In this document: in pieces, positions 227-27,934 of the stretch | How the letters are laid out: each line of letters starts with the position of its first letter | Numbering within the stretch: the first letter of the stretch is position 1 | The notes under the pieces: generated by a model | Told to the model about the DNA's origin: nothing | The model's database searches: none | Seen by the model: only the letters and a program-made list of their open reading frames with translations | Program-made: the position numbers and the translations under genes | Source of the DNA: Bigelowiella natans CCMP2755 | Lineage: Eukaryota > Protista > Cercozoa | DNA length: 33,160 nt | NCBI GenBank assembly: GCA_000320545.1 | Contig: ADNK01000749.1 | Span: 1 to 33,160 of the forward strand | Reading direction: 5' to 3'

Positions 227-2587
227 TATCAGAGTATCGTTATCACCCTACCCCTGACAAGCGTCACTAACGGCCTTGTTCAAGTCACTAAAGCATACAG
301 CACAAGAAAGTAAGTGCCTCTGTGTATGTGCGTGTACGTATTCCAAAGATTGGAAAACTGATAGAGATAATGTCATCATCATCATCATGATCATCATCAT
401 CATTTTATCAACGTTAAATAACGTTATGCAGTACCCGCAGCCAGAATCAATATATTCCTTCGTACAATTCAATGCCTCAGGAGTCTGGCAGTCGTTTGTA
501 TTGTGCCCTCCACCTAAATATCACCACCATCAGCAGCAGCAGCCAGCAGCAGCAGCAGCCGTGTATGAAGACAGTCAGCAAACCGTTTAACGATGCTTGA
601 TAGACTATTGCGTTGTAGTACCGCATTCACAGCAAGCTTCATTTGCAAATTTCCCGTACAACGCGTCCTTACACTCGCCCACGGAGCACCTAGATTGTAG
701 TCGCAACAACGATATAATCGATCGATGGACATAGACTAGCAGTTCAAAGCACCATATCTTCGTTCTCTCCTAATCACGTTGTCCATCTACTGACCCTCTT
801 CGTAGGTCTTGCTCGGTTACAAGGAGTTCTCCATCACGGCAAACACCCTGCCGAATAATCGAGAAAAGAGACGAGAAGAAGATGTAGTAGCACCAACATA
901 ATACACAAAATCATCCGTATTTTTATTATTATTATTATTAGCACTTTTTCGAAGCTATCCTCGGCGTGCGCGCGTGCAGCAGCATATAGAAACAGACGCA
1001 GTAATATGATTAATTCTATTACTTTGCGAATATATCACAACACTACTGCTAGCGCCATACCTTTTTGACATAACTGATGCACGTGTCCCCATCCGGGTCT
1101 TTCCATTTCAAGTAATCGGAGCAACCCGGTGTGACGAATCTAATCATGTACGCATGTTTGCAGCCACAGAAGTCATTCATTGCAAGCAAGTTAGTAATCT
1201 TATTTTAGTCAGACGCTGATCGAGTAAAGCATTTCGTGCACACTTTACCTTTGGCAGGACCGCACAGCCACTGCAAGAATCAAAGCTTCATCTTTATACT
1301 TACTGCGGAACTCTCTCGACTAAAGAGCGGTAATGTTGGGAAGGGATTTTGATAAACAGAATGATACGGATTATCATGAGTTACAAGATATATTTTGTTA
1401 TATTCAATCTTCGGGCTCCTACATGTTGACAGTGGAACCAGCTCTCCTGCGTCCCATTCTTGCCTATTCCTCTGGCGCACTGTAGTAGTTTTTACAGCAA
1501 TAGGTAGTTTAAATCACGTTCTGTCTTTCCGAATATGACGATGGCGCGAAGAGGAAAGAGGGTCATCGCCTATTACCGTATCCGAGCATGCGTCGTAGTG
1601 GGTACCCTGGCAATCAGTTGCAACCTGGCCATAAAGAAGCGTACAGCATCGGTCAATCATGCACGGTCGGTATAAGAGTAATAACAACGCCTTTTCGTAG
1701 AAAAATGCGCCACCTTTAGTAAACCCTCGATGTCGTGATCTGTGTAAAGATTACAAACCATTTCACTTTTGATGACCAACACAGATGATTGAAACAGGAG
1801 CTTACTTGTACACTTCTTCGGATCGGGAAAAGTGTGGCTGCAATACCTTTATTTAGAGACAGATTTTAACTTAAGCAACAGAGATAATGCATTGTGAAAT
1901 ACGCAAAATTTTCTTACTTTGCAGCACAGCTCCTTATATATCCCATGATATGTATGGCTCTTAAACCTGCAAAATTCATGGTCCGTATTCAGATATTGAT
2001 CATTCGAGTAGAATCTTATTCCTCGTTTCACCACCACCACCACCAACAACAACAACTACTACTACTACTACTACTATGATTACTGCCACTGCCACTGCTA
2101 CTATTAACGCTGCTTATGACATAGTACTTACTAGGGAGAATGCCATTGCCGAGAGCACATCTTGCCAAACAGCCAGCGCTGTCAAGGGGGCATTCCTGAT
2201 TATTTGTAGATAAGAAATACAAGGCTATTACCAAGGCAAAGGCTAGGAGGGGGATTGAAGAGAAAGGCTATATATTGACCCTCTGGCATCGCTCAAATGA
2301 TTGACAGACTCGATCTGCTTTGCACTTTTTCATTAACTGCCCGCACTGAGGAAGCAAAACGAAGCGTAAGTCGTTCGTTCGCATAAGATGGAGGATGCTT
2401 AATAGAGTTCGCCGCATGCCTTCTTACTCAAAGTCATATTTCGCTACAACTTAATGCGGAAGCGCCAAAGGAAAATTGCGTGTAATGATACCGATCTCTC
2501 CTCGCACTTCTCGCGTTCTGTTTGCCCAGCGAGGACCGGATCGAGTGCAGCTGTGAAGAGGAGAAGAGGGGCAACTTTGAGCATCAT
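87..2587 (-). CDS. Secreted cysteine-rich multi-exon protein (VDE-like N-terminal Cys-rich domain plus WxDxxGxxCxxY...ANEACCxCGGG module); 3' end lies beyond the window start
   Basis: About 15 GT-AG exons join in frame (2587-2492, 2345-2280, 2195-2132, ... last visible 120-87): MMLKVAPLLLFTAALDPVLAG|QTEREKCEERSCGQLMKKCKADRVCQSFERCQRECPLDSAGCLARCALG...CSDYLKWKDPDGDTCISYVKKGVCRDG...YGKFANEACCECGGGHNTNDC...YTRCFQKACAE. Hydrophobic signal peptide; phases consistent at every junction. Confidence 0.85.
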
Positions 2588-3051
2588 GAGGATGCGTTGT
2601 TCCCTGGATCACAGTAGAGAAAGATAGTCGGGGAGAGAGAGGGAGAAGGGTTCGCAAGCACAGTAGCTTTGGCGTTCGCCACGATTTGAGGATTGGCTGA
2701 GATTTGGTTGTTGATGATCCTGATCTGGAATCTCAATCAAGATATTCTCCGTATTAATTTCTTCTTAATTCTTTACATGAGAAGAAGTAGCACAATATTT
2801 TGTTAAATCGGATGTCATTAGTTCACGCTTCCATAGGTTATTTCCGGGTTTTTTCCCGATCTGGTCCTTCCTCCAAATTCCGGATGTTTAACATGCTCCC
2901 ACGGGAACACACGAAAACACCTTCGATTCCAGGGATGCGACAAGTCACTATCTATTGTTTCTTATATGAAACACCGACGATATTAGGACTGCGACAAGGA
3001 TAAAATCTCCTCTACGTCATCACCGACCGACCAGAATCGAGCATTCAGGAA
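2588..3051. promoter_or_regulatory. Putative bidirectional promoter (Cys-rich gene / MEA1-like)
   Basis: 464 bp between divergent ATGs, free of microsatellites; ATTGG (reverse CCAAT) near 2692, TTCCGG at 2842 and 2878, ACGTCA near 3014. Confidence 0.55.
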
Positions 3052-3950
3052 ATGGCTGCACAACCCTCGGAACAGAACGTCGAGGTAGTCGTAGGTTAGA
3101 GGCGGCGACCAGAAAAAGATGCATGCAGTTCGTTTATACTGTTTGCCCTCTCGTCACAGGTCCAAATCAAAGAGCACGAGAAAAAGGTTGCAGCCTATGT
3201 CCGAAACGAGCTTTTGAACGGTGAGACGAATTGTGTTCGGAATCATTCAAGGCCCTAAGATGAGTGTATGATGCTGAATTAAATTTAGCAGAAGGACTAG
3301 AAGACCCACGTAATAAGGTTATAGCAGGAATATGGGAGGAGAAATTAAATAGCTTAAATCGTGAATACCTCGAATGCGTAAACGCGAGGGTTCAACCAAA
3401 AGACAATTCCTCGTCGGCTCCTTCCACAGAGCAGCAGCAGCAACAACAACAGCAGCAGCAGCAGACGGAGGGGCAAAATGAGACAAAAATAATAGCACCG
3501 AAAACAATAGATTCGAAGAGTAGCGACCAAACACAAATTGCCAGCCGGAATGACTCAGTCGAAGATGTAGATGCACGCGCACAAGGATATGGCATGTTGA
3601 GTTCCCAATTTCCTGATAGTGACGACGACAGTAACAACGATGACGAAGATGCATACCCTGACACTGGATATGCACAATTGCAAGGAAATATGGATGGCGA
3701 AAACGGAGATGAAGGAGCCGAATTAGAGGGAAATCAAGCTGGAACATTGGAAACAAAAGAAACCAATAATAATGATGCTGCTGATGCCACTGCACAGATA
3801 TTCAGCAATGATAAAGCCAGTAAGATCCAGAGCATAATGGGTGAGCTCGATCTTCCAGCACCTGAATGGGCAAAGAATGTTCCTGAGGATGTTTGGATGA
3901 AAACATTGCTATCTGGAGCACAGATTGATCAACAAAAAGAATGCAAGTGA
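3052..3950 (+). CDS. Male-enhanced antigen 1 (MEA1)-like acidic protein
   Basis: Three exons (3052-3084, ~3160-3220, ~3289-3950): MAAQPSEQNVE|VQIKEHEKKVAAYVRNELLN|AEGLEDPRNK... with polyQ, acidic D/E tracts, GYxxL motifs and C-terminal IQSIMGELDLPAPEWAKNVPEDVW, resembling the MEA1 signature (M...LP...P.WA..+.+..W). Confidence 0.7.
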
Positions 3951-5112: not shown

Positions 5113-7041
5113 CTATTGAGCTGCCTCACCAGTAGATGTGGCAGTCTTACTTGCAACATGCTCCTCTTCTTTGCCTTTCTTTGGAGATGAAGGCTCAGCA
5201 GCGTCGACGCTGCCGCTACTGCCCTCCGCATCATCAAGATCCGCCTTAAAGCTTGCTGGCTGTTGAGTTGAAGTGATTAGGCGGTACCACATCTGACCGT
5301 TGGGATCGACCTTTCTCGGCCCCGCCTTGATAACTTCCAATATGGGAATGTACACGTAATTTGTACTGACCATACCGGCGCTAAAGCCGGTAAATCCGGC
5401 CATGGCGCCATGGACAGCCTGCTGAGCCAGGACAGCGCAATACACCCTGTCGCCGGCGTTGGCAGGAATGGAACGAATCATGTAGGTCGGGTCAATGTTC
5501 ACCAGACGGTGGTCCATATTGCGTTCCGAGAGGCAAGCTTTGATCTTGGCCCTAAGGTGCTGGCCGATGTCGCCACTGATGGGTTGTGTAGCCCCACCCT
5601 TTGCCAACTGCTCCCCACCCATAGCCTTCTGCTGGAGCTCTTTCAGCGCAACCTCGGCCATGCCCTCCGCGGCCACGATCACGGCGTGCTGCTTCTTTTG
5701 AAGTACCTTGAGGAGATGCTCCAGAAATTTTTCTTCGCTGAATTCAATTTCAGGGATTAGCGCAATGTCGACGTCGTTCGAAGCGAGCGATGCCATAAGG
5801 GTGATTGCACCGCTGTGTCGTCCCATCAGCCTCACGATGCCAATGCCGTTGATCGACGCCTTCGCTTCCACTTTAGCGCTCTCTATAGCGCGCTGCGCCT
5901 CTTCAATGGAGGTTTCGAAGCCGAAAGACCGATCAATGATGTTGATGTCGTTGTCGATTGTCTTGGGTATGGCTACCACGCTCATCTTGAGGCCTTCATC
6001 CCTAGCACTCTCATAAATGGCATTGGCTGCTGCATGCGTCCCGTCACCGCCAACTATGAAGAGCATGTTAATCCCTAATGCCTTTGCAGTGGCCAAGATC
6101 CCATCACGATCGTAGTAGCCTCTTCCTGTGCCAAGGATGGTGCCTCCCATCTGGTGGATTCCAGCCACTGTTTTGGGATTAAGCTCCATGCAGAAGTCGT
6201 TCTTGTGCTTCTCGAGGGAAGGGGAGAGATCCGCCCTCAAGCCTCGCAGTCCATAACGGAAACCGGTAATGTCACGTACTCCATAGTTCTCCCACAGCGA
6301 GTTGGTGACTTCTCTCACCACTGAGTTCAGCCCAGGGCATAGCCCACCGCACGTCACAATCCCTGCTTTTACCTCCTCTGGCTTGAAGAATATCTTCTCG
6401 CGGGGGCCGGCTCTGAGGAAGGTCCGCGCATCGTCCTCGCATAATTCGCCCTTGCAGAAGGCAACGTCTACAAGAACTTTTTCATCGCGTTCCATAATAT
6501 CAGCTTCGAATCCTGGCCGTGCAACTAGCGGGGAGTCGACACCGTTAATGTGCTTCAAGTAATCGGTGAGGTGAGCAACCTCTTCTTCATCTGCCACAGG
6601 ATGGTAGCCCAGCGGTTTGCTTCCGTAACACTTTGTATCTAGCTCTCTCCTTCTCCTCCACTTCCGTGTCCCCGTAAATCCAATACCTGGGGACTTCGCA
6701 GCAGATGCCGTTGTTCTACGCGTTGACAAGAAGGGAGGTGATGAGAATGTTGGACTTCTCACCGAGGATAGTCTCCCTGCAGATGTTCTCTTAATGGAGC
6801 TATACTTGTATCCACTAGATTTTAAGCTGCTGAACCTTCCCAATTTGCTGCATGGCACGCAATGATTAGCTGACAGAAGTAAAATCGCGGCGAGGAGAGA
6901 GCACACTAAGATCATATTTGTCCTGCAGTTTTTCATCTGTATAGCCGCGGTATGATGCCGATGGTCGTGCAGACGATCCTGATCTTCTGGTCCGGGGGAT
7001 AGCGGGTAAAACACATCGCCTCGTCGCCTCGACATCAACAT
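5113..7041 (-). CDS. PFK: ATP-dependent 6-phosphofructokinase (group X, plant/kinetoplastid type), intronless, with probable bipartite plastid-targeting leader
   Basis: 642-aa uninterrupted ORF with RAGPR, GIVTCGGLCPGLN, GGTILGTGRG, GGDGT (Gly variant, ATP-type), PKTIDND, LMGRHSG and DPTYMIR. N-terminal hydrophobic stretch MILVCSLLAAILLLSA is followed by an S/R/K-rich transit-like region. The true start could be a downstream Met. Confidence 0.96.
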   Translation of the reverse strand: MLMSRRRGDVFYPLSPGPEDQDRLHDHRHHTAAIQMKNCRTNMILVCSLLAAILLLSANHCVPCSKLGRFSSLKSSGYKYSSIKRTSAGRLSSVRSPTFSSPPFLSTRRTTASAAKSPGIGFTGTRKWRRRRELDTKCYGSKPLGYHPVADEEEVAHLTDYLKHINGVDSPLVARPGFEADIMERDEKVLVDVAFCKGELCEDDARTFLRAGPREKIFFKPEEVKAGIVTCGGLCPGLNSVVREVTNSLWENYGVRDITGFRYGLRGLRADLSPSLEKHKNDFCMELNPKTVAGIHQMGGTILGTGRGYYDRDGILATAKALGINMLFIVGGDGTHAAANAIYESARDEGLKMSVVAIPKTIDNDINIIDRSFGFETSIEEAQRAIESAKVEAKASINGIGIVRLMGRHSGAITLMASLASNDVDIALIPEIEFSEEKFLEHLLKVLQKKQHAVIVAAEGMAEVALKELQQKAMGGEQLAKGGATQPISGDIGQHLRAKIKACLSERNMDHRLVNIDPTYMIRSIPANAGDRVYCAVLAQQAVHGAMAGFTGFSAGMVSTNYVYIPILEVIKAGPRKVDPNGQMWYRLITSTQQPASFKADLDDAEGSSGSVDAAEPSSPKKGKEEEHVASKTATSTGEAAQ

Positions 7042-10495: not shown

Positions 10496-11438
10496 TCACA
10501 AGAAAAATTTCTCCGGTTCATCAACATTTATGAGCTCCGATACGCTTAGAATCCCCGTTGTGTCCCACGAAGCCTGATATTATAAAAAGTAAGTTGAAGC
10601 AAGCACAAAGCAGCACTTATAATTCGGGGGAACGTGCCATGGACTTGCTCGCAAAATGCCTCTCAATAGAGCATGAGAAGTCAATGCATCATCCAACCCG
10701 CTATCACCCATTGCTAGATTTGTACCGAGAATCGTTTTCGAGCCTTCGATACGCTCCGTAAAGGCAGTCCAATGCAAGTTCCTGATTTAAATTATTATTC
10801 CAAAATACATAGCAGCGGAGATGTCGGTGGGGCAGATAGGTGAAAGCATGCAGAAGCAAACACTCACGATAGAAGTGCCATTTTGTAGATTTCAAGAGCG
10901 TGATAGTGTAATCAAGAAATACCTGGGAAATTCAGTGGCCTGAGAGCTAGGATATCCGTAGATGGCGGAAGCACATTACCCAACAACCGAGTAAATGGTG
11001 TGAAAGCAGAGTGCTCAAGATCTGTCATATAGATATGAACCGAACGATGCAACGATGATACCATTATATAAATCGGAATTAATGTAATATAATACGTGTG
11101 CACGTGCTCGCATGTGTGGGTGTGTGTGTGTGTGCGTGTGTGTGTGTGTGCACGTTACATAAATGCTGCCAACACCATGATGTGATATACCTCCGGTGAG
11201 TCGTCTATAATGGCGGTCAGCTTTTAGGATCATCACGTCGAAGTGTCTATTATTGCGCAAAAACCACAAATAACAACAACAACAAATCTAAGCATGAAGT
11301 TGACGGGTTGATAACGATGATGGGAAAAGAAGGGAGTCCCCAACGATGATCTTGGATGTTTCATTTGTACAGCGGCATGATTTGACCAGGCATGCACATG
11401 ATGCAAGTATGATAGTAGAGTAAGCCTAGATTATGCTC

Positions 11439-11471
<33 letters not shown>

Positions 11472-12981
11472 CACGGATCGCAAAACTAAACAAAAAACGA
11501 TAATAGCTCTCCGCATCCTTTCCTTCCTCCTTCTAAATACGATCGATCTCAACGTCATCATTTATCGTAATCACCCTATATGCTCTGTGAAAGACTTCGG
11601 CGCTGCCCAGAACGGGAGCGGCGTTTGGTAGAAAGAAGGCGTCTGGTTGTGGGACAAACACAGGAAGCAACACCGACAGCAGCAGCGCACGAATAAGAAC
11701 GATGGCATTACTACGATGATGGTAATAAATAACCGTATCATTTCAATGCACACCGACAGAATTGAAAGATTTTTGCTTCACACCATTCATGTATTATCAT
11801 TACCATAATCTCCAATCGAGAAGTCTTGAGGGCCTTCTTTAGCCTCCTTGCAGCATTTTGAGCTGATGGAAAGAGAAAGAGAGAGAGATAGAGAGGAGGA
11901 GGAATAGGTATCACATATGCATATATTTACATAATAAAAATAGACACATAAAAGATGATCGAGATCAAACATACACACACACATACATACGCATACACGC
12001 ACCATATAAGCGACTACTGCTTTCCTCCACGTTTCCATCTTGCTCATACATTTTCTCCATGAACTCGATCGCTTGCAGAACGTCCTCCTCAGTTGCGTAC
12101 GATGGGTGCTTCGAAGAGTGAAAGAGGCGAGGGGCGGAGGGAAATAATGACGGATTGGCCAACAACAAAAGTAATATCTTCACATGTCCAATTTTCAGTT
12201 TGAATATCTCATTTGTTTTTAAATTTCTGAACAAAATAAACAAATCTACACAATGATAATCCAAGTGACACGCCCCTCCCCCCCCCCCCTCTATTTATGG
12301 TCCCCTCTTTTTTCTTCCTACCATGTTTGCAGGTGAAAGATGCATGGTGACACGGCGATTATCGTTTCCTATAAATGCATCATTTGGATATTATACGACA
12401 ACGACGACGACGATGATAATAAACATGAAAATGGAAGCGAAGGAGGAGAGAGAGAGAGAGAGAGAGGAGGAGAAGGAGGAGGAGGAGAGAAGGTAGAGGA
12501 AGGGTAAGAGAATACGATGTACGAGTGAGCAAGAATTTGATATATGATGTCGTTTCTTACTTCCTCACTTACCTCTAAGGAATGTGTCTACGAGGAGAAG
12601 GTCCATCGTCACTTCAATACCAGCATTTCCAGCTAGTAGCAGAAGAGAGTTTGATCGTGACAGACGCTCAGCTCCCAGATCAGAGTCGTCTCTGTGCGCG
12701 CGTAGTGGTGAATCAATGGATGAATGAGAAAGCAGCTCGATACATTATATGCGAATCACAGATCTCTCTCTCTCTCTCTCACTCACACACACACACACAC
12801 ACACGCGCGCGCGGAGAAAGAGAAAGAGAGAGAGAGAGAGGGGGGGGGGGGGGGGGTACCGCAAATACGTTGAATTCGTGTGATACAACAAGATTCTGCA
12901 TCATCACTGCAGTCAATCAACCCCCCCCCCTCACCTTAAAAAGATCGATGGTTTCTCTGTTCCATGCTGGTAATCGGGGAT

Positions 12982-13021
<40 letters not shown>

Positions 13022-13389
13022 TTATTTGCAGTAGCACAGAACAACAATAAAAAGGTGATATCCTGCTGTTGCTATGTGGATTGTGACAAATCACGCTACC
13101 CCACTTAGAAGTAGGTGGGGGGGGGAGGGGGGTTGGATGCGTCGTGACACGTTCTACTTACTCCGTAGATTTCGGCAGGGGCATTATCCGCGATGTATAC
13201 TTTGTCATCTTCTCTCCTCACATAGGAGAAATATGTGTCAGCCTCTTCAAAAGTCTCTGGATCTACAGATGTGCGGTTCTGTTGTTTTGATGACAACGAC
13301 AACGATGAGGAGGAGGGTGAGCACGTACCAATGTTAGCAGCACACACAAACAGCAGGTAGGCAGCTATGCAGCAGATACGGGGTGAGAT

Positions 13390-13430
<41 letters not shown>

Positions 13431-15874
13431 CATACATATACATATATTCACACCCCGGAACAAATCAAATTGCACGATGTGCGCTTATTGTAGACCATAA
13501 TATCTATAAATCCTATGTCACAAACTGGGTGATAGCCGTTCGCATCTACCCCTCCTCCCCTCGCCTTCCTCCCCACACATTCATTATCCAGCATTATTAT
13601 ATCTCACTTTACCTCGGTCTTTGGGTTTTTCACGATATAATCCTCGAACTGAAACACAGCCATGGAGAAGAGGAGGCAGAGTTATCTCTAACACCATCAG
13701 AAAATCTATGCTAATTTGCTTTTTGCATCACAGAAATGTATGTCAGATTTCTTATTACTGTTTTTTTGGTTGTCTCTTTCCACCCCCCACCACCCACCAC
13801 CACACCATCACCATCACCATCACCACCACCACCACCACCACCATCGTTGTTCCCTATCCCACCGTCTTCTCCTCGTCTTCGTCCATTGGGTTTATATCGT
13901 ATATTGAAAAATTTCTCCCTGTGCTCTCCACCTGATACGAGAGAAGAACCAGAAGAAAAATAGCAGGGATACATAGGAAGGAACTTACACCTCGCTTCTT
14001 TTCAAATCGTAACTATTCTCCCCAGCCTACTACCACCTGCAGCAGCAGTAGCAACGTCTCCTTCCTCTGTACTACACCTACTACTACTACTACTACTACT
14101 AATAATAATAATAATAATACCCGTTCACGATCCTGCTCGCTTTTCTCCCGGCGTCTGCGCTCTTGGTCCTCCTCAAATTTCTTCTTATCCTCTTCAAACT
14201 AATTGATTGACGATGGTTGCAGCAGGGGGGGGGGGGGGGGGTTGAGTGGTGGCAGCGAATATTGCTGGTGGTATTGTGTGCGTGTGTGTGTGTGTGTGTG
14301 TGTTTGTGTGTGTTTGTGTGTGTGTAGATACATAGCAGAGAAAGAAAGTCCAAAATCCAAGGATATTGTAACATAATAAGGCAGCATAACAAAAACCCAA
14401 CAATACCGACTACTACTACTACAACTACTACAACTACTACTACTAAGGATTGGAACAAACACGTACTTTCTCTCTGTTGTACAACGCAACACGCTCACGC
14501 GCATCCATCGTTGAAAGCACCATATTCCTTCCATACAGCTCTCTGTGCAGCAGGTCAACTCTTCCAGCTGTAGCACACAGCCGCAGCAGCTGGGGGGGGA
14601 TCCATCCTTCCTGAGCAATCTTTTCTTCGATCTCACCCGCAGCCTCAGCGTCACCCCTGCCGTCATCAAGATCCACATCATCCTCAAAGGCCAAGGAGGA
14701 AGGTGAGAAGGAGAAGAAGGCGTCTTCAATGTTGTCCTCAACCACGTCCGCAGCGCCTACCAATAGCTCGTTCTTCTGCTCTGCATATCCGTCATGCTGA
14801 AGGAGGAGTGTGAAGGACGGGGTTAAAACGACACTCGTGCACGTGAAAGCGCAACATTCGATAGTACAGTTGTAATGGTGGTGGAGGGTAGTAGCAGCAG
14901 TAGCAGCAGCATGCATGCATCGATCATCCATCATCATTCTGAGCATGCATGTTATCAATCATCATCCATCATCATCATGAGCAGCAAATAACCTGAGAGG
15001 CTTCGATGCCGTCGTGATCTTCAAGGATTTGAAGCAGCCGTTGGTACACGTAGTGCTCTGTGAAGAAGATGCTTCCCCTCTGTGTGCGTTGTAGGAGTAG
15101 TAGTAGCAATAATAATAACAATAAGCAGGATTAACGTTAGGAAAACAACCAAATCCCTGTGACTCACGCACTCACTAGCAGCATAGCACCCGCAGCAGCG
15201 AGGAGCTCTACGATACGTGTCAATCAGGGGAGGAAGAAGAGGAGGAGGAGGAGGAGAGGGGGTGGGGGGGGAACGGAGGCAGGGAGGCCTCTATTCTCTC
15301 GCTTCAAGCGCATATACACACGCTCACTTGAGCACGCACGATTGCATCATACACCGCTTGCACAACAAGCGAAGAAGAACTACGACAAGTGGGAGATGTG
15401 GGTTTGAGGTCAGCTGAGTGCTTGTTACAGCAAACCTTCCAAGTTCTGCGTCTGTGATCTTGTAAGTCGAGGTACTGATTCCACTGCTTGCCTCTACTGC
15501 CCTTCTGAGCGATGGGAGGAGAAGAAGAAGAAGAAGAAGAAGGAGGAGGAGGAGGAGGAGGGGTTCATAAAATCAATAAGAAAGAAAGGCAGCGTTGTTA
15601 AGGAGAAGGAAGGGACCAGTAATACCACTGAACAACACAACACAACGCACATCAACAGAGATTCTTATACGGTGATTGGCCACCAACACGAGGGTTTACT
15701 ACTGAATCTTCAAAACAAACAAAAGCTATGGTTGCCTGCTCCATCATCATCATCATCATCATCATCACCATCATCATCATTGAAAGTGATATCGGCTGGT
15801 GTTAGCAAGTATCAAATCGCTAGAAAGTAGGAAAAGAGAGAATGGTCAAAGGACGATGAAAGCGCGCGCGCGCG

Positions 15875-15925
<51 letters not shown>

Positions 15926-16872
15926 AAGAGAGGACACGCAATCACACGCACGTACGCGTGCATCTACACAAACACGCACCAGGGGGCTGAACGGTCGGTC
16001 CAATATAGATGATGACGACGATGTTGATGACGATAAAGCAATCTAGAGGAGAAGGGTTAAAATTAGGGTAAAGACGTTGCACCACCACCACCAGCAGCTA
16101 TATTTATTCTGGTAGTGTAAGGACAGGTGCTGATTTGTGGTGGTGATGGTGGTGATGGTGATGGTGGTGGTGGTGATGACGATCATCGAGACCAAGCAAC
16201 AAAATCATAGATGCACAATCGTGCATATGCATGCATGTGTGTGTGTGTAGTGTGCAAATTCGATAACTAGTCATCATCTTACTTGCGCCTCTTGAACGAG
16301 ATCTTTCACGGCCCTAGCAACTTTGGAACTATGACCATAAAACCCACATCAGAAGCACAATCACACTAGCACATCATGGACGCCAACAGCAGAGTGCTAC
16401 AATTCTGCAGCAGTAGCAGCAGCAACAACAACAACAAAACAGCGAGTAGATCATGGATGTGGGATGCGTTTCTTGGAAATAATGGGAGGAGAAAAAAAAG
16501 AGGGGGGGGGGGGAGGGGATATATCCCGACAACATTCCTGCACACATTATCAACAAAGAATATATAGTTGGAATTTCTGAGAGCACAGCAGCAGCAGCGC
16601 AACCACCTGTAAGGAGGCTTGGTAAACACCTCCAGAATCCTCCCCAGGCTGTCAAAATACCTCTTCGCATAATCACTAGGGAGGAAAAGGGCCATATCAT
16701 TCACATCGGCAAAACAACAAATTAGTGTCATCGTCAAAGGAGAAGAGGCGTGCATGCCATGCATATATGATGGATGAAGCAATCAGAAGAGAGATGGGAC
16801 TCCATTTCCGCTGATGCTGCTATTATTGCCACTACAACTACTAGTAGTAAGAAACTGCCACAAGAAGAACGA

Positions 16873-16903
<31 letters not shown>

Positions 16904-17761
16904 TACTACTACTACTACTAGGTGACAGTGGTAAAACAACCCCTTTGTTTTGGTTGATGTCGTGTGGTACTCCTCTCCATACTCCCAGAAGTCGACTGTT
17001 CAGAAAAAAGAACGAGGAGAAGGAGGAGGGGAAGCGAATGCGGCGGTGAGACACGGAAACAGCTGGATAATTGAAAAAGAGGAGGAGGATGATAATGATA
17101 GTAGTGATGATGATCTGGGATTATTATCATCATCATCATCATCATCACCACCACCACCACCATCATCATAGCGACAATATCCACCCAACACACAGATGGG
17201 CTGCTAAGAACTGGTGACCTTCATCAGATGGCCCTCTCGGTTCAGGCAGGTTCATCAGCAAGTACTCATCGAACAGCTCACGACCTCGTTCTTCGGTCAA
17301 ATAGCTGAATAATAGTTGGAGAACAAGCGGATGATGATTGATACAAGAACGGTAATTCCACAATATGAACAGTCTAATACCTGTGATTTAGCCGTCTCTC
17401 TAATGTCACACTCTTTCCCACCTGCACATCGAGGAGACATGTTGTGGATTTTCATCAAGATATAATATTTGTGTTGATATTCAGAATATTGCCGCAGCAT
17501 CAATCATCGTCACTGTTGTTAGTATGAATCCAATCTCCACCCTCTCACACTCAATTTATTACCTTGTGTGAGCGTGACATATCGATTAAGAACTGGTTCT
17601 CGAAATAGTCGAGCTCGGTGGACTAATAGGTGAGAAGAATCACATGAATGAGGGCTGCTACGACACCTTCATGCTGTATTATTGTGACTTTGGAGAAAAT
17701 ATGTAAGGAAATTGTCAAGTCTTTGTTTCAAAACAATAGGGAATGTGTCGCTCTTTCTCTT

Positions 17762-17800
<39 letters not shown>

Positions 17801-17875
17801 TCTTTTCTTCCCTGTGTATCAGTTAAGTGGTTTTCGTGTGCAAAAGAAGACTTAGAGAAGAGAAAGAGAGAGGAG

Positions 17876-17929
<54 letters not shown>

Positions 17930-18110
17930 ATCGTACGAATCGCTCCTCCTGCTCATCATCCATGATTTGGAAGCCTCCCGTTGTCCTTTTATGGTAAAAA
18001 ATAATTATACACCCTTCTTACACTTAAAGTGATGATGAAGAATGCAGTCAAGATCATTTCACAAGGAAAGCTAGGTTTGTGTGCGTGATCCTCAGGTATA
18101 TCACCATGAT

Positions 18111-18189
<79 letters not shown>

Positions 18190-18415
18190 CTAAAAGGAAT
18201 TGGAGCGTGTAGTATTGTGAAACTTGAGTAGTAGCTTAGTATTTTCGACTGGTTGTTGTTGTTGTTGTCTTCTCACCGATTCGTCATGTACGAGGCGTTG
18301 TAATGTATGTCATCGTTGACGTCTATCAGGCTATTGTCCGGGCCGACGCTGTCCCATGCATAGCTATCCATCTCATCCGTAATTCCATCAAGGTGCATGG
18401 TTTTTTGGTATCCCT

Positions 18416-18455
<40 letters not shown>

Positions 18456-18793
18456 TACGTTCCAGCTCTCCAGAGAGTGGGGGAAGATAACGGTTTGTGA
18501 GCAGTGTTTTTGGTTTTCCAACAAACCTCGTAGCGCTTTCGCCTCTTGGATGCAACCTTCGTCACACGATCTGTGCAGCGTCTTCTCCCCAAGTGACCGA
18601 GCTTCGATCTCATAAGTAAGGGCTTTATACGTCTCATAACCATGGATTGAGCGACAGGTATCATCCTGCTACTGCCTCTTCCGAGCCACCCCTTAAGGAG
18701 TAGAAGATGAAGGACAGTGAGGGTCCACACCAACCCCCACCCTCCGAAACAACTTCGGGCCCTGTTCGCACCCAAACCATGCGAAGCTGTCAT
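10496..18793 (-). CDS. ARMT1-like / DUF89 (damage-control phosphatase family, subfamily III-like) protein with degenerate active site, large inserts and bipartite leader
   Basis: More than 25 exons. ARMT1-like blocks appear in order: KP...WNQYL, TWKRGSIFFTEHYVYQRL, HDGYAEQK, IFLRDDS, LLLLAGNAGIEVTMDLLLVDTFL, VTMHLSPANMHPSYATEEDV, FYQTPLPFWAAP, VMILKADRHYRRLTGD, ILALRPLNFPGTCIGL, SWDTTG; stop TGA at 10498-10496. First exon MTASHG...WGLVWTLTVLHLLLLKGWLG plus an R/K-rich segment. A few internal junctions (about 13.7-14.0 kb, 16.3 kb, 16.9 kb) are ambiguous. Confidence 0.85.
17763..17926. repeat. Complementary (CT)n and (GA)n microsatellites in one intron
   Basis: (CT)n at ~17763-17795 and (GA)n at ~17881-17926. 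Confidence 0.9.
18112..18187. repeat. Compound (CT)n(GT)n microsatellite, intronic
   Basis: Directly visible tandem repeat. Confidence 0.95.
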
Positions 18794-26043: not shown

Positions 26044-26487
26044 TTAAGACATCGTAAGGACGGCTTTCTTTTTCTTCGTCTCAATTGCCTTCTTAGCACT
26101 GGAGTTATGATGAGTATGCTTCGAAGCTCCTTTCTGCTCTACATTATCATGGCGGTGTGCGCCATCACGGCTGCCTTGAAGGACATCAGCCCCATTTTGA
26201 ACGGTTTTCTTAACTTTTGCATCAGCAGCAATGTCGTGATTCTTCTGGCTATTATCAACATTTTGCATTGCATCCTCTTTCATCATGGCCTCTAGTTCTG
26301 CTTGAAGTTGACTCTCTTCCTCCTCATCTGCCGGCGCTGCCTCAAACTGTGCGTCGTTATCGATAATAAGCAGAATGAATGAGAAAACAGGAGGAGAAGC
26401 AACTAAGAAACAAACGTTGATGTAGCTAACGCAAGATGAAGCAAATTAACACCCAAAATTCTCTTCCTCCTTCCTTGGATTGTTGGT

Positions 26488-26522
<35 letters not shown>

Positions 26523-27934
26523 GCTAAAGGAATTACCATCTCATCAACAGTCGTGCAGAGGTCCCGCAAATCGTCAAGATCATCACGGATACTGTCCGGA
26601 TCCAAACCGTCAGTCTCCGTGACTCGTTTGAGCTCTTTCCCGCCTTTCCGTAGCACCTTCATCACCTGCGTGTTTGTCCATGTGCTTTGCAGGGACTCGT
26701 AAAGCATCTCAAGATTCTCAAGATGATTTCGCGCCTGATCTACTCTCTTCTGAGTACGTTTTCTCTTCCGCAGAAGGAATAAGGCCGCCGCCTTTGATTT
26801 CTTGTTGAGAATGCCAACTTTGAGCTTTGTAACATTTTCCTCCCCGGAAGCTATATTCTTTTCTATGTCTACAATCGCCTCTTTGAACATTGCGATGTAC
26901 CCGTCGGATTCGCATACTTGCAGCTCAGATGATGATGACGCTGCTGACGGGGCGAGTTTTAGCCATTTGCCTCTACTTACAGATGATACTGCTGCAGCTA
27001 CTGGGTTAATTTCCCTCGCGAGTCCAAGAGACTGCATTCTATTGAAAAGTAGGTTCAAGTCGCTGTTTGAGAAACAAACAAACTCCTTTGCAATACGTTC
27101 CCTGGGAATTAAATAGTCTGCTCGAGCTTCCGCGTTTTGAATCATACGGGTGTGCACGATATGGGCAACTTCGTCTATAAGGCTTGGGATAATGAGGACC
27201 TCATCCTCGTCCGGTATTTGTGGTTTCTGATCGCCCCCCCCCAAAGCTAGTTTGTACAACTGATCCGCGAGCAAGGACACGGAGCTGTAGACATAGCCGC
27301 TGTACGATGACGACGATGATGACGACGACGAAGAGGAGAGGCTCTTGGCTCGGCAAACTTTCTTAGATTTGATGAGATGTGCTATAACCTGACTGATTGG
27401 ACGTGGCTTCATCGATTTTCGTGTAAAGCGCGTATGAAGTGTTTCTAGAGAGAATGCGAGGCAATTTTTTGAGGAGGATCGCCGATTTCTCATTTCTTCT
27501 TCTATCAAAGCTCGTTGGGTGTCAACGATGGCCGTTTCCCAAAACTTGAACTTTTGATTCCATTGGGCAACATCAAGCTCCCTGAGTTTGAAAGGTTATA
27601 GCACACCAAAATTAAGATCACGGAAGACGGAGGACGAGGAGTTGTTATGATCACGAAGCAGCTATTGAAAAAAAGCGAACGAGGCAGCTATCAAAATAAA
27701 CAAAATATAATCTGAATGTATTTATATTAATAGAATGCTCAACGAAGTAACTACTCATCAGTCTCCGTCCGGTAATGTATTTCATATGTGGTAAAAAAGT
27801 AAAGTTCATTACTTGCGTTTCGGAAGATTGGCAAACATGAATTTCATTGAATAATCATCGCCCCAATTTTCGGGAAAGCCCCTCAGCTTTTCGATGCGCT
27901 GCTTGCGATCTGCCGAGAGCGATTGAGGTTTCAT
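26044..27934 (-). CDS. CHMP7: Charged multivesicular body protein 7 (ESCRT-II/III hybrid)
   Basis: Three exons (27934-27813, ~27581-26537, ~26347-26044): FPENWGDDYSMKFMFANLP..K|ELDVAQWNQKFKFWETAI (typical CHMP7 N-terminal winged-helix start), FTRKSMKPRPISQVIAHL, then a Snf7 domain (KAAALFLLRKRKR...LENLE...NTQVMKVLRKGGKELK...ELEAM). Confidence 0.88.

What the first reader, a model, noticed from the sequence alone, without database searches (positions are those of the whole stretch)
10496..18793. Probable plastid-targeted DUF89/ARMT1 pseudo-phosphatase with catalytic motifs replaced but ORF intact
Seen: the spliced product follows ARMT1/YMR027W-type DUF89 proteins block by block, but DNxG reads GNAGIE (12630-12613), K..P.FVSD reads SPANMHPSY (metal-ligand Asp to Tyr), KGDLNYR reads KADRHYR, RTxK reads RPLN, and LWGN..D is not recognisable. 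Established: in DUF89 phosphatases the DN and the later Asp bind the catalytic metal, and RxxK binds phosphate. Inference: a catalytically dead paralog kept across more than 25 exons, given a signal + basic transit leader and long acidic/charged inserts, possibly acting as a sugar-phosphate sensor or scaffold in a complex plastid. I am not aware of such a protein being described.
Basis: partly seen in the sequence, partly recalled or inferred. Interest (0 to 1): 0.8.

Follow-up and report, generated by a model that had tools for sequence, protein, structure and literature searches.

The report
Catalytically dead DUF89 phosphatase homolog
This 27-exon gene of the alga Bigelowiella natans encodes a relative of the DUF89/ARMT1 "damage-control" sugar-phosphate phosphatases that has lost its catalytic and metal-binding residues yet is conserved in at least three chlorarachniophyte genera, so it is probably a working non-enzymatic protein, a kind not yet described for this family.

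Summary
Window 18793-10496 (minus strand) is one 27-exon gene with 26 GT-AG introns. Its translation is identical to the existing Bigelowiella natans model jgi/Bigna1/70929 (797 aa). The product matches Pfam ARMT1-like_dom (72 bits). An AlphaFold model superposes on human DUF89 (Z 26.6) and matches subfamily III best.

- Nucleophile Asp to Gly (GNAGIE).
- Second metal Asp to Tyr.
- RTxK Lys to Asn (RPLN).
- KGD reads KAD.
- The lid WGN..D motif is degenerate.

It is not a decaying pseudogene. Transcript-derived orthologs from Norrisiella (45% identity) and Gymnochlora (37%) are collinear and lack the same three residues. Silent sites between Bigelowiella and Norrisiella are saturated.

Asn591, Asp712, Arg716 and Arg748 are retained, so part of the phosphate pocket survives. 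The N-terminus has a hydrophobic segment followed by a very basic stretch. This fits a bipartite plastid or periplastid leader, but localisation is untested.

The best reading is a conserved DUF89 pseudo-phosphatase with a non-catalytic binding or regulatory role. A "sugar-phosphate sensor" role is speculation. I found no paper describing such a DUF89. Databases hold the protein only under an automatic "phosphatase" name. It is a new variant of a known family, of moderate interest.

The parts
10496..18793 (-). Whole coding region: 27 exons, 797 codons plus TGA. This is the Bigelowiella natans gene model jgi/Bigna1/70929.
   Evidence: exons joined by coordinate translate without internal stops to a product identical to P0002, and all 26 introns are GT-AG. 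One search gives the name of P0002.
18527..18793 (-). Exon 1 (aa 1-89), the N-terminal leader. It has a hydrophobic segment at aa 19-33 (18739-18695), then a very basic stretch at aa 34-89 ending in KRRKRYE.
   Evidence: Kyte-Doolittle maximum 1.88 at aa 19-33. The next 55 aa hold 18 K/R and 1 D/E. The leader is only 25% identical to Norrisiella, but Norrisiella has the same layout.
16941..18413 (-). Exons 2-7 (18413-18277, 17985-17937, 17622-17563, 17421-17381, 17304-17219, 16995-16941; aa 90-232). This is a clade-specific N-terminal extension that lies mostly outside the DUF89 fold.
   Evidence: One search gives the coordinates; 46% identity to Norrisiella; the DUF89 superposition starts at model residue 177-232, depending on the chain; no Pfam family and no usable atlas match.
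14993..16675 (-). Exons 8-12 (16675-16607, 16328-16283, 16042-15980, 15504-15436, 15079-14993; aa 232-343). These encode the N-terminal helices of the DUF89 domain, including WNQYLD (15483-15466) and EHYVYQRL (15058-15035).
   Evidence: domain 1, aligns this block to human DUF89 residues 64-157.
14467..14796 (-). Exon 13 (aa 344-453). It holds the acidic insert and the degenerate lid region. LYGRNMVLS at 14538-14512 stands in place of LWGN..D.
   Evidence: This exon was the query that retrieved P0002 and the Norrisiella ortholog P0004.
12935..14198 (-). Exons 14-18 (14198-14121, 13931-13863, 13648-13613, 13278-13162, 12981-12935; aa 454-569). They encode a charged helix and a clade-specific insert. 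The insert carries the motif EEADTYFSY...DKVYIADNAPAEIYGI, which is well conserved between Bigelowiella and Norrisiella and only partly in Gymnochlora.
   Evidence: AlphaFold gives a long helix at 442-482 and pLDDT below 50 for 485-569.
12573..12691 (-). Exon 19 (aa 569-609), the strand that should carry DNxGxE. It reads GNAGIE (12630-12613): the nucleophile Asp is Gly590 and the Asn is kept.
   Evidence: Pfam E 1.2e-4 on this exon alone.. One search aligns it to human 'DNSGFE'..
12003..12368 (-). Exons 20-21 (12368-12322, 12108-12003; aa 609-660). HLSPANM|HPSYAT stands in place of K..P.FVSD. Ser620 (12336-12334) replaces the Lys, and Tyr628 (12099-12097) replaces the second metal-binding Asp.
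   Evidence: the position aligns to human Asp291, which is Ala in the D291A mutant entry 6umr..
11191..11862 (-). Exons 22-24 (11862-11804, 11642-11575, 11246-11191; aa 660-721). They include PLPFW and KADRHYRRLTGD (KADRHYR at 11224-11204). Asp712 and Arg716 are retained.
   Evidence: The frame of exon 23 is fixed by the orthologs.
10496..11021 (-). Exons 25-27 (11021-10923, 10781-10726, 10573-10496; aa 721-797 plus stop). LALRPLNFPG carries RPLN (10941-10930) in place of RTxK, 47-50 residues from the C-terminus. The C-terminal W..tG motif is also here.

Best explanation
The gene encodes a conserved pseudo-enzyme of the DUF89 (ARMT1-like) subfamily III damage-control phosphatase family.

Shown:
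- It keeps the DUF89 fold.
- It lacks the Asp that serves as both nucleophile and metal ligand (now Gly590), the second metal-binding Asp (now Tyr628) and the phosphate-binding Lys of RTxK (now Asn751).
- The lid Asn and Asp are also degenerate.
- The same three core positions are lost in orthologs from Norrisiella and Gymnochlora.

Inferred from published mutagenesis: it cannot hydrolyse phosphate esters by the family's aspartyl-phosphate, divalent-metal mechanism.

Because the protein has stayed 37-45% identical while silent sites saturated, it is under purifying selection and must do something non-catalytic.

Most likely role (inferred): it uses the remnant pocket (Asn591, Asp712, Arg716, Arg748) and the clade-specific additions to bind a phosphorylated ligand or a partner protein as a regulator or scaffold. 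The additions are a 125-140 aa N-terminal extension, a charged helix and the EEADTYFSY...DKVYIADNAPA motif.

Likely location (inferred from the leader alone): inside the complex plastid, either the stroma or the periplastid compartment.
For: Gene structure:
- 27 exons, all introns GT-AG, product identical to P0002.
- Single copy in the genome.

Family and fold:
- Pfam PF01937 at 72.3 bits against a cut-off of 25.
- Ortholog profile against PDB human DUF89, E 2.5e-12.
- hhalign against the canonical paralog, 98.2% probability, E 3e-14.
- Foldseek top 15 hits are all subfamily III DUF89 structures, E about 1e-8.
- VIA-align gives Z 26.6, 344 residues aligned, rmsd 4.2 A to 6umq. Subfamilies II and I give Z 15-17, and the best unrelated chain gives Z 6.

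Residue losses, by alignment:
- Gly590 at the nucleophile position.
- Tyr628 at human Asp291.
- Asn751 at the RTxK Lys.

Published mutagenesis (PMC9062747): D248A, D248N, N249A, D286A and K401A in S. pombe Duf8901 each abolish activity. The matching Duf89 mutants D252A, D252N and D290A do the same.

Conservation:
- Norrisiella reads GNAG / HPSC / RPIS. Gymnochlora reads GNAG / HVSM / RPLL.
- Both come from transcriptomes. L004 is an intron-free 2.8 kb contig with the complete ORF.
- Four-fold silent sites are 23.9% identical against 25.6% expected by composition. dN is 0.56 overall and 0.49 in the domain.

Precedent for a non-catalytic DUF89 role: S. pombe duf89-D252A and D290A do not phenocopy the duf89 deletion (PMC10187668).

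Leader: hydrophobic segment at aa 19-33, then 55 aa with 18 K/R and 1 D/E. Norrisiella has the same layout.
Against: - No expression or splicing data for the B. natans gene itself could be retrieved. The model is an ab initio 'fgenesh1_pg' model, and no transcript-derived protein clusters with it.
- Loss of activity is inferred from mutants of other DUF89 proteins, not measured here.
- The clade has new invariant residues next to the old site (Arg613, Arg614, His618, Asn623, His625). They could form a different binding or catalytic centre.
- The AlphaFold model has low overall confidence (mean pLDDT 50, five-sequence alignment), so pocket geometry cannot be judged.
- Targeting was scored only with hydropathy and charge counts. 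The basic stretch is unusually R/K-rich and poor in S/T for a transit peptide, and it ends in an NLS-like KRRKR.
- dN/dS could not be computed because dS is saturated.
Confidence: 0.72

Rival explanations
1. It is still an enzyme. The DUF89 scaffold has been re-tooled with a different catalytic or binding centre. Candidates are the clade-invariant Arg613, Arg614, His618, Asn623 and His625, together with the retained Asp712, Arg716 and Arg748. The centre would act on a different substrate or without the canonical metal.
For: New invariant His and Arg residues flank the old metal site in all three orthologs. Four pocket residues are retained. The pseudoenzyme review in the abstract listing (PMC10211241) notes that catalytic residues can migrate.
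Against: The residue replacing the second metal Asp is not conserved (Tyr, Cys, Met). Neither is the one replacing the Lys (Asn, Ser, Leu). This is what relaxed constraint at a disused site looks like. Gly at the nucleophile position offers no side chain. No known phosphatase motif such as RHG or CX5R is formed.
Confidence: 0.13
2. In B. natans the gene is a silent or decaying copy, or a mis-predicted model, and only the relatives' genes are functional.
For: The model is ab initio. No B. natans transcript-derived protein clusters with it, and no contig encoding it was retrievable. The introns are full of microsatellites.
Against: 27 exons give an uninterrupted 797-codon frame with 26 canonical GT-AG introns. 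The product aligns end to end with two transcript-derived orthologs with no junction artefacts. Neutral decay would be expected to break such a frame.
Confidence: 0.07
3. It is a non-catalytic DUF89, but it is not in the plastid. The hydrophobic segment would be a signal anchor or secretory signal. Alternatively, the KRRKR-ending basic region would direct it to the nucleomorph or nucleus, echoing the nuclear, non-catalytic role of S. pombe Duf89.
For: The basic stretch is atypically R/K-rich (18 of 55), poor in S/T (7), predicted helical, and ends in KRRKRYE. The non-catalytic role of S. pombe Duf89 is in transcription termination (PMC10187668).
Against: The Norrisiella leader looks like an ordinary signal plus transit-like peptide (10 S/T, 7 K/R, 2 D/E). 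Bipartite signal-plus-transit leaders are the rule for plastid and periplastid proteins in B. natans (PMC3542566).
Confidence: 0.2

Closest known systems
DUF89 subfamily III damage-control phosphatases: human C6orf211/ARMT1 (PDB 6umq), S. pombe Duf89 and Duf8901 (7t7n, 7t7k, 7u1x) and S. cerevisiae YMR027W (3pt1, 5f13)
   Same: Same fold: Z 23-27 over about 345-370 residues. Same block order: WNQYL, E.Y.YRRL, D.F..K, the (D)NxGxE strand, the (K)..P..VS(D) strand, PFW, K(G)D..YR.L.GD, (R)T.(K) 47-50 residues from the C-terminus, and W..tG. The Asn, the KGD Asp, the YR Arg and the RT Arg are kept.
   Different: The nucleophile and metal Asp is Gly, the second metal Asp is Tyr, the RTxK Lys is Asn, and the lid WGN..D is degenerate. 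The protein has 797 aa instead of 380-480. It has an N-terminal leader, a 125-140 aa extension, and about 110 aa of inserts between the lid and the core strand.
Engineered phosphatase-dead S. pombe duf89-D252A / D290A (PMC10187668)
   Same: A DUF89-III protein without the nucleophile or metal Asp that still carries out its in vivo function. This shows the fold can have a non-catalytic role.
   Different: Those are laboratory point mutants of an active enzyme in a fungus, and they act in lncRNA termination. Here the loss is natural, involves several residues, is conserved across genera, and comes with an organelle-type leader.
B. natans paralog jgi/Bigna1/83188 (P0001; ORF in L002)
   Same: Same genome, a DUF89 domain above the Pfam cut-off (98-99 bits), and also Gly at the nucleophile position (GNSG). 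It has no SD Asp and reads RVVE for RTxK. Its N-terminus also has a hydrophobic segment followed by a basic, S/T-rich stretch.
   Different: Only 24% identical to this protein, no closer than the canonical paralog is. The model has 1432 aa with other flanking regions. It keeps KGD. The domain lies in a single open frame without introns.
B. natans canonical DUF89 (ORF in L001, contig C1374)
   Same: Same genome and subfamily III. It is 26% identical over the C-terminal half.
   Different: It has every catalytic motif (DNAG, FVSD, KGDLMYR, RTLK, LWGN..D) and scores 191 bits to Pfam.

Membership tests
DUF89 / ARMT1-like domain (Pfam PF01937) | Sequence match to the family profile above the curated cut-off of 25 bits | tested here: met
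   P0002 scores 72.3 bits, E 5e-20. Norrisiella P0004 scores 73.6 bits. Exon 19 alone scores 21.8 bits.
DUF89 / ARMT1-like domain (Pfam PF01937) | The DUF89 fold | tested here: met
   The AlphaFold model has mean pLDDT 50, with the core at 64-92. The Foldseek top 15 are all DUF89 structures. VIA-align gives Z 26.6 to 6umq, with 344 of 415 residues aligned, against Z 6 for the best unrelated chain. Caveat: the model has low overall confidence.
DUF89 subfamily III (YMR027W / ARMT1 type) | RTxK motif about 40-50 residues from the C-terminus (definition in PMC9062747) | tested here: not met
   The motif position is right: residues 748-751 of 797, which is 47-50 from the end. It reads RPLN, and RPIS and RPLL in the orthologs. 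The Arg is kept and the Lys is lost.
DUF89 subfamily III (YMR027W / ARMT1 type) | Closer in sequence and structure to subfamily III than to subfamilies I and II | tested here: met
   Z is 23-27 to subfamily III structures, 16.8 to At2g17340 and 15.0-15.5 to PH1575 and AF1104. The PDB sequence hits are all subfamily III.
DUF89 subfamily III (YMR027W / ARMT1 type) | Size of about 380-480 aa (PMC9062747) | tested here: not met
   The protein has 797 aa. The DUF89 part spans about residues 230-781 with large inserts.
DUF89 metal-dependent phosphatase (catalytic membership) | DN motif: the Asp is the nucleophile and a metal ligand, and the Asn is a metal ligand | tested here: not met
   Gly590-Asn591 (GNAGIE, 12630-12613). 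All three orthologs have Gly. D-to-A and D-to-N mutants are inactive (PMC9062747).
DUF89 metal-dependent phosphatase (catalytic membership) | Second metal-binding Asp (VSD; human Asp291, Duf8901 Asp286) | tested here: not met
   Tyr628 here, Cys in Norrisiella and Met in Gymnochlora.
DUF89 metal-dependent phosphatase (catalytic membership) | KGD Asp (Duf8901 Asp363) and the phosphate-binding Arg of NYR | tested here: met
   KADRHYR keeps Asp712 and Arg716, which are invariant in the three orthologs.
DUF89 metal-dependent phosphatase (catalytic membership) | Lid motif LWGN..D (Asn192 and Asp195 in Duf8901) | tested here: inconclusive
   A local MAFFT alignment places LYGRNMVLS (Bn), LFGDSMVLS (Ns) and a non-matching stretch (Gymnochlora) opposite LWGNQADSS. 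Profile methods do not align this region.
DUF89 metal-dependent phosphatase (catalytic membership) | Metal-dependent phosphohydrolase activity | not testable with these tools
   This needs recombinant protein and an assay.
Chlorarachniophyte plastid- or periplastid-targeted nuclear proteins | Bipartite leader: ER signal peptide plus transit-peptide-like sequence (PMC3542566, PMC4641359) | tested here: inconclusive
   There is a hydrophobic segment at aa 19-33 (Kyte-Doolittle 1.88), followed by a basic, acid-poor stretch. Norrisiella has the same layout. No SignalP or ChloroP was available. The plastid proteome supplement is not held.

The most novel reading that the evidence does not exclude
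Chlorarachniophytes have turned the DUF89 fold into non-catalytic, organelle-targeted phosphometabolite-binding regulators at least twice: this clade and the separate GNSG paralog 83188. This protein would sense fructose or hexose phosphates inside the complex plastid. It could act together with the leader-bearing phosphofructokinase encoded 3.5 kb downstream. Alternatively, the clade-invariant His/Arg cluster next to the dead site could form a new, metal-independent active or binding centre.
Probability: 0.12. Interest if true: 0.75.

Novelty: new variant of a known kind. Interest (0 to 1): 0.5.

Why it matters
DUF89 proteins occur in all domains of life and are treated as metabolite-repair phosphatases. 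The in vivo phenotype tested in fission yeast does not need catalysis. A natural lineage that has discarded the catalytic machinery but kept the fold under selection would be an independent handle on that non-catalytic function. It shows which surfaces stay conserved once chemistry is no longer required.

The finding also has a practical side. The automatic names "damage-control phosphatase" and "metal-binding domain" on these database entries are probably wrong, and metabolic reconstructions of chlorarachniophyte plastids should not count this protein as a phosphatase.

If the leader does send it into the complex plastid, it adds a candidate regulator to a compartment whose carbon-export control is poorly known.

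Tried and rejected
- Local tblastn of the two paralog ORFs against the window gave only insignificant hits (best E 0.5). Two of them, KADRHYR and EHYVYQRL, later proved real. Pairwise BLAST is too weak for this divergence.
All later work used coordinates only.
- I first read exon 23 (11642-11575) in the wrong frame ('DAFFLPNAAP...'). That produced phase conflicts at both junctions and made me consider odd splice sites and cysteine-rich extensions. The database model and the orthologs show the other frame (TPSFYQTPLPFW...), which splices cleanly.
- I considered and dropped a 22-nt mini-exon near 14010, an 'NSNYIFF' exon near 16575, and a hydrophobic exon near 18060.
- A word search with the L002 domain found only its own JGI model.
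- A word search with alignment A1 found only the query, probably because low-complexity words swamped it. A search restricted to residues 500-797 worked.
- P0003 from the representative search is a repetitive protein that matches only the acidic stretch, and I discarded it.
- A metagenome-contig scan with the ortholog alignment found no relative.
- There is no record of contigs encoding P0002 or P0007.
- dN/dS by NG86, LWL85 and YN00 failed because dS is saturated. I report silent-site identity instead.
- The supplement of the plastid proteome paper is not held, and PMC2722280 is not held.
- The pyrenoid proteome paper mentions no DUF89.
- An atlas search of the N-terminal extension gave no usable hit.
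- The weak Pfam hit to RGS (15 bits, below cut-off) is treated as noise.
- No complex prediction with the neighbouring PFK was run, because adjacency alone does not justify it.
Full report
**What the window is.** The window is contig C2988 of a 91 Mb eukaryotic assembly. A paralog's protein carries the name jgi/Bigna1/83188. This gene's product is EukProt EP00466_Bigelowiella_natans_P003246, jgi/Bigna1/70929. The organism is therefore the chlorarachniophyte alga Bigelowiella natans.

**Checking the observation.**
- A six-frame scan of the whole genome with Pfam PF01937 found two strong DUF89 genes elsewhere (L001 at 193 bits, L002 at 102 bits). It found one weak hit in the window, at 12559-12696 on the minus strand.
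- The stop-to-stop frame holding that exon, scanned on its own by reference, scores 21.8 bits, E 1.2e-4.
- I then read the minus strand from 19400 to 9900 and assembled exons from open frames, AG/GT sites and phase.
- Exon 13 (window:14467-14796:-) went to the representative library. It returned P0002 (797 aa, 100% identical over the exon) and P0004 (778 aa).
- My joined model was never typed or sent to a search. A script joined the 27 exons by coordinate only to compare them with P0002, and they are identical. There are no internal stops and all 26 introns are GT-AG.
- All later full-length analyses used the database record P0002.
- Each quoted motif is at the stated place.
- One correction to my own reading: exon 23 must be read as TPSFYQTPLPFW..., as the orthologs show.

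**Is it a DUF89?** Yes.
- P0002 scores 72.3 bits (E 5e-20) to ARMT1-like_dom, against a cut-off of 25.
- A profile of the three orthologs hits only subfamily III structures in the PDB (human 6umq/6umr at E 2.5e-12, S. pombe 7t7n/7t7k).
- The same profile aligns to the canonical B. natans paralog with 98.2% hhalign probability.
- An AlphaFold model from a five-sequence alignment is poor overall (mean pLDDT 50) but reaches 64-92 in the core.
- Foldseek's 15 best matches are all subfamily III DUF89 structures.
- VIA-align gives Z 26.6 to human DUF89, with 344 of 415 residues aligned, rmsd 4.2 A and model range 230-781. Subfamilies II and I give Z 15-17, and the best unrelated chain gives Z 6.

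**Are the catalytic residues gone?** Sanchez et al. (PMC9062747) give the reference:
- The DN Asp is both a metal ligand and the nucleophile that forms an aspartyl-phosphate.
- The DN Asn and the VSD Asp complete the metal site.
- The RTxK Lys and a lid Asn hold the phosphate.
- A lid Asp and the KGD Asp position the water.
- D248A, D248N, N249A, D286A and K401A in Duf8901 abolish activity.

By alignment the window protein compares as follows:

| Canonical residue | Window protein | Status |
|---|---|---|
| Nucleophile Asp (DN) | Gly590 | lost |
| DN Asn | Asn591 | kept |
| Lys of K..P | Ser620 | lost |
| VSD Asp (human Asp291, the residue mutated in PDB 6umr) | Tyr628 | lost |
| KGD Asp | Asp712 (KAD) | kept |
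| NYR Arg | Arg716 | kept |
| RTxK Arg | Arg748 | kept |
| RTxK Lys | Asn751 | lost |
| Lid LWGN..D | LYGRNMVLS | degenerate |

By the published mutagenesis, any one of the three core losses should kill the canonical reaction.

**Pseudogene or maintained gene?** P0004 is Norrisiella sphaerica (UniRef A0A7S2QSB4; MMETSP0113 member P0005). A complete intron-free transcript contig is L004. P0007 is Gymnochlora sp., MMETSP0110.
- Both are collinear with P0002 from the N-terminal extension to the C-terminus, at 45% and 37% identity.
- Both lack the same residues. Norrisiella reads GNAG, HPSC and RPIS. Gymnochlora reads GNAG, HVSM and RPLL.
- The replacement residues at the second Asp and the Lys differ between genera. 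That is expected for a site no longer in use.
- Asn591, Asp712, Arg716 and Arg748 are invariant.
- Between Bigelowiella and Norrisiella, four-fold degenerate sites under identical amino acids are 23.9% identical against 25.6% expected from composition. They are fully saturated. dN is 0.56 overall (0.49 in the domain, 0.56 in the N-terminal extension, 1.23 in the leader).
- A formal dN/dS is not computable, but retaining 45-48% identity across saturated silent divergence means purifying selection.
- The motif residues lie inside exons 19, 21, 24 and 25, so alternative splicing cannot restore them. The relatives' mRNAs carry the same replacements.
- The gene is single-copy in the assembly.

**What else is in the protein.**
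- Residues 1-89 are a leader: a hydrophobic segment at 19-33, then 55 residues with 18 K/R and one D/E, ending in KRRKRYE.
- Norrisiella has the same layout with a more ordinary S/T-rich second part. The leader sequences themselves are only 25% identical.
- Bipartite signal-plus-transit leaders are what B. natans uses for plastid, periplastid and nucleomorph proteins (PMC3542566; PMC4641359). I could run no predictor, so targeting stays an inference.
- Residues 90 to about 230 form a conserved extension with no Pfam or atlas match.
- Between the lid and the core strand are a long charged helix and an insert with the motif EEADTYFSY...DKVYIADNAPAEIYGI. AlphaFold cannot place it.

**How it most likely works.**
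- Shown: DUF89 fold, loss of the nucleophile, metal and Lys residues, and conservation under selection in three genera.
- Inferred: no canonical phosphatase activity, and a non-catalytic role that uses the remnant phosphate-binding residues and the new surfaces.
- A direct precedent exists. In fission yeast the phosphatase-dead duf89-D252A and D290A alleles do not reproduce the duf89 deletion phenotypes. The protein matters there, not its catalysis (PMC10187668).
- Whether the alga's protein binds a sugar phosphate, a partner protein or both is open.
- Rival readings, with my probabilities: a re-tooled active or binding centre built on the clade-invariant Arg613, Arg614, His618, Asn623 and His625 (about 0.13), and a silent B. 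natans copy (about 0.07). A non-plastid destination (about 0.2) concerns location only and is compatible with the pseudo-enzyme reading.

**Comparison with what is known.**
- The protein sits in the DUF89 family by sequence and fold and is closest to subfamily III. It fails that subfamily's diagnostic RTxK motif and size range, and it fails the catalytic definition.
- I found no paper that links DUF89 or ARMT1 with pseudoenzymes or pseudophosphatases in the searchable library. That library omits most subscription journals.
- The sequences themselves are already public and carry an automatic 'Damage-control phosphatase ARMT1-like metal-binding domain' name.
- I rate it a new variant of a known kind, and of moderate interest.

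**Limits.**
- There is no B. natans expression evidence.
- The alignment behind the structure model is shallow.
- Only three orthologs were found. The word-based searches are insensitive and the one exhaustive search used a single 110-aa exon, so the clade's true distribution is unknown.

Noticed in passing
L002 (G000:C509:16741-20775), ORF 1165-3861 minus; JGI model P0001 = jgi/Bigna1/83188, 1432 aa: A second degenerate DUF89 in the same genome. It reads GNSG for DNxG, has no VSD Asp, and reads RVVE for RTxK, but keeps KGD. It scores 98-99 bits to Pfam. Its N-terminus also has a hydrophobic segment followed by a basic, S/T-rich stretch. It is only 24% identical to the window protein, so it may be an independent loss of catalysis. 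There is also a weak Agenet-like hit (15 bits, below cut-off).
   Followed up: partly
L001 (G000:C1374:18739-22815), ORF 1309-3165 minus: The canonical DUF89-III of B. natans, with all catalytic motifs (191 bits), encoded in a single open frame. From its first internal Met it has a hydrophobic segment at aa 41-55, then an A/S/R-rich stretch. It too may be organelle-targeted.
   Followed up: partly
window 5113-7041, minus strand: An intronless 642-aa phosphofructokinase gene (Pfam PFK, 195 bits) lies 3.5 kb downstream on the same strand. Its 225-aa N-terminal extension holds a strong hydrophobic segment (Kyte-Doolittle 2.83), then 55 aa with 19 S/T, 10 K/R and 0 D/E. That is a textbook bipartite-type leader. 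A leader-bearing fructose-6-P kinase sits next to a dead fructose-phosphate-phosphatase homolog. This may be coincidence, and synteny in other chlorarachniophytes was not checked.
   Followed up: partly
window 26426-27508 minus; 3264-3950 plus: Other open frames with Pfam matches: Snf7/ESCRT-III (53 bits) and MEA1 (33 bits). Neither was examined further.
   Followed up: no
window 10496-18793, introns: Most of the 26 introns (76-475 nt) carry (CA)n, (GA)n or trinucleotide microsatellites. Several create long spurious open frames on both strands, for example 12582-12989 on the plus strand.
   Followed up: no
P0002 residues 613-625 (window 12357-12322 and 12108-12106): A clade-invariant cluster, RR.T.H....N.H, flanks the dead metal site in all three orthologs. 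It is absent from canonical DUF89 proteins and is a candidate new ligand-binding feature.
   Followed up: no
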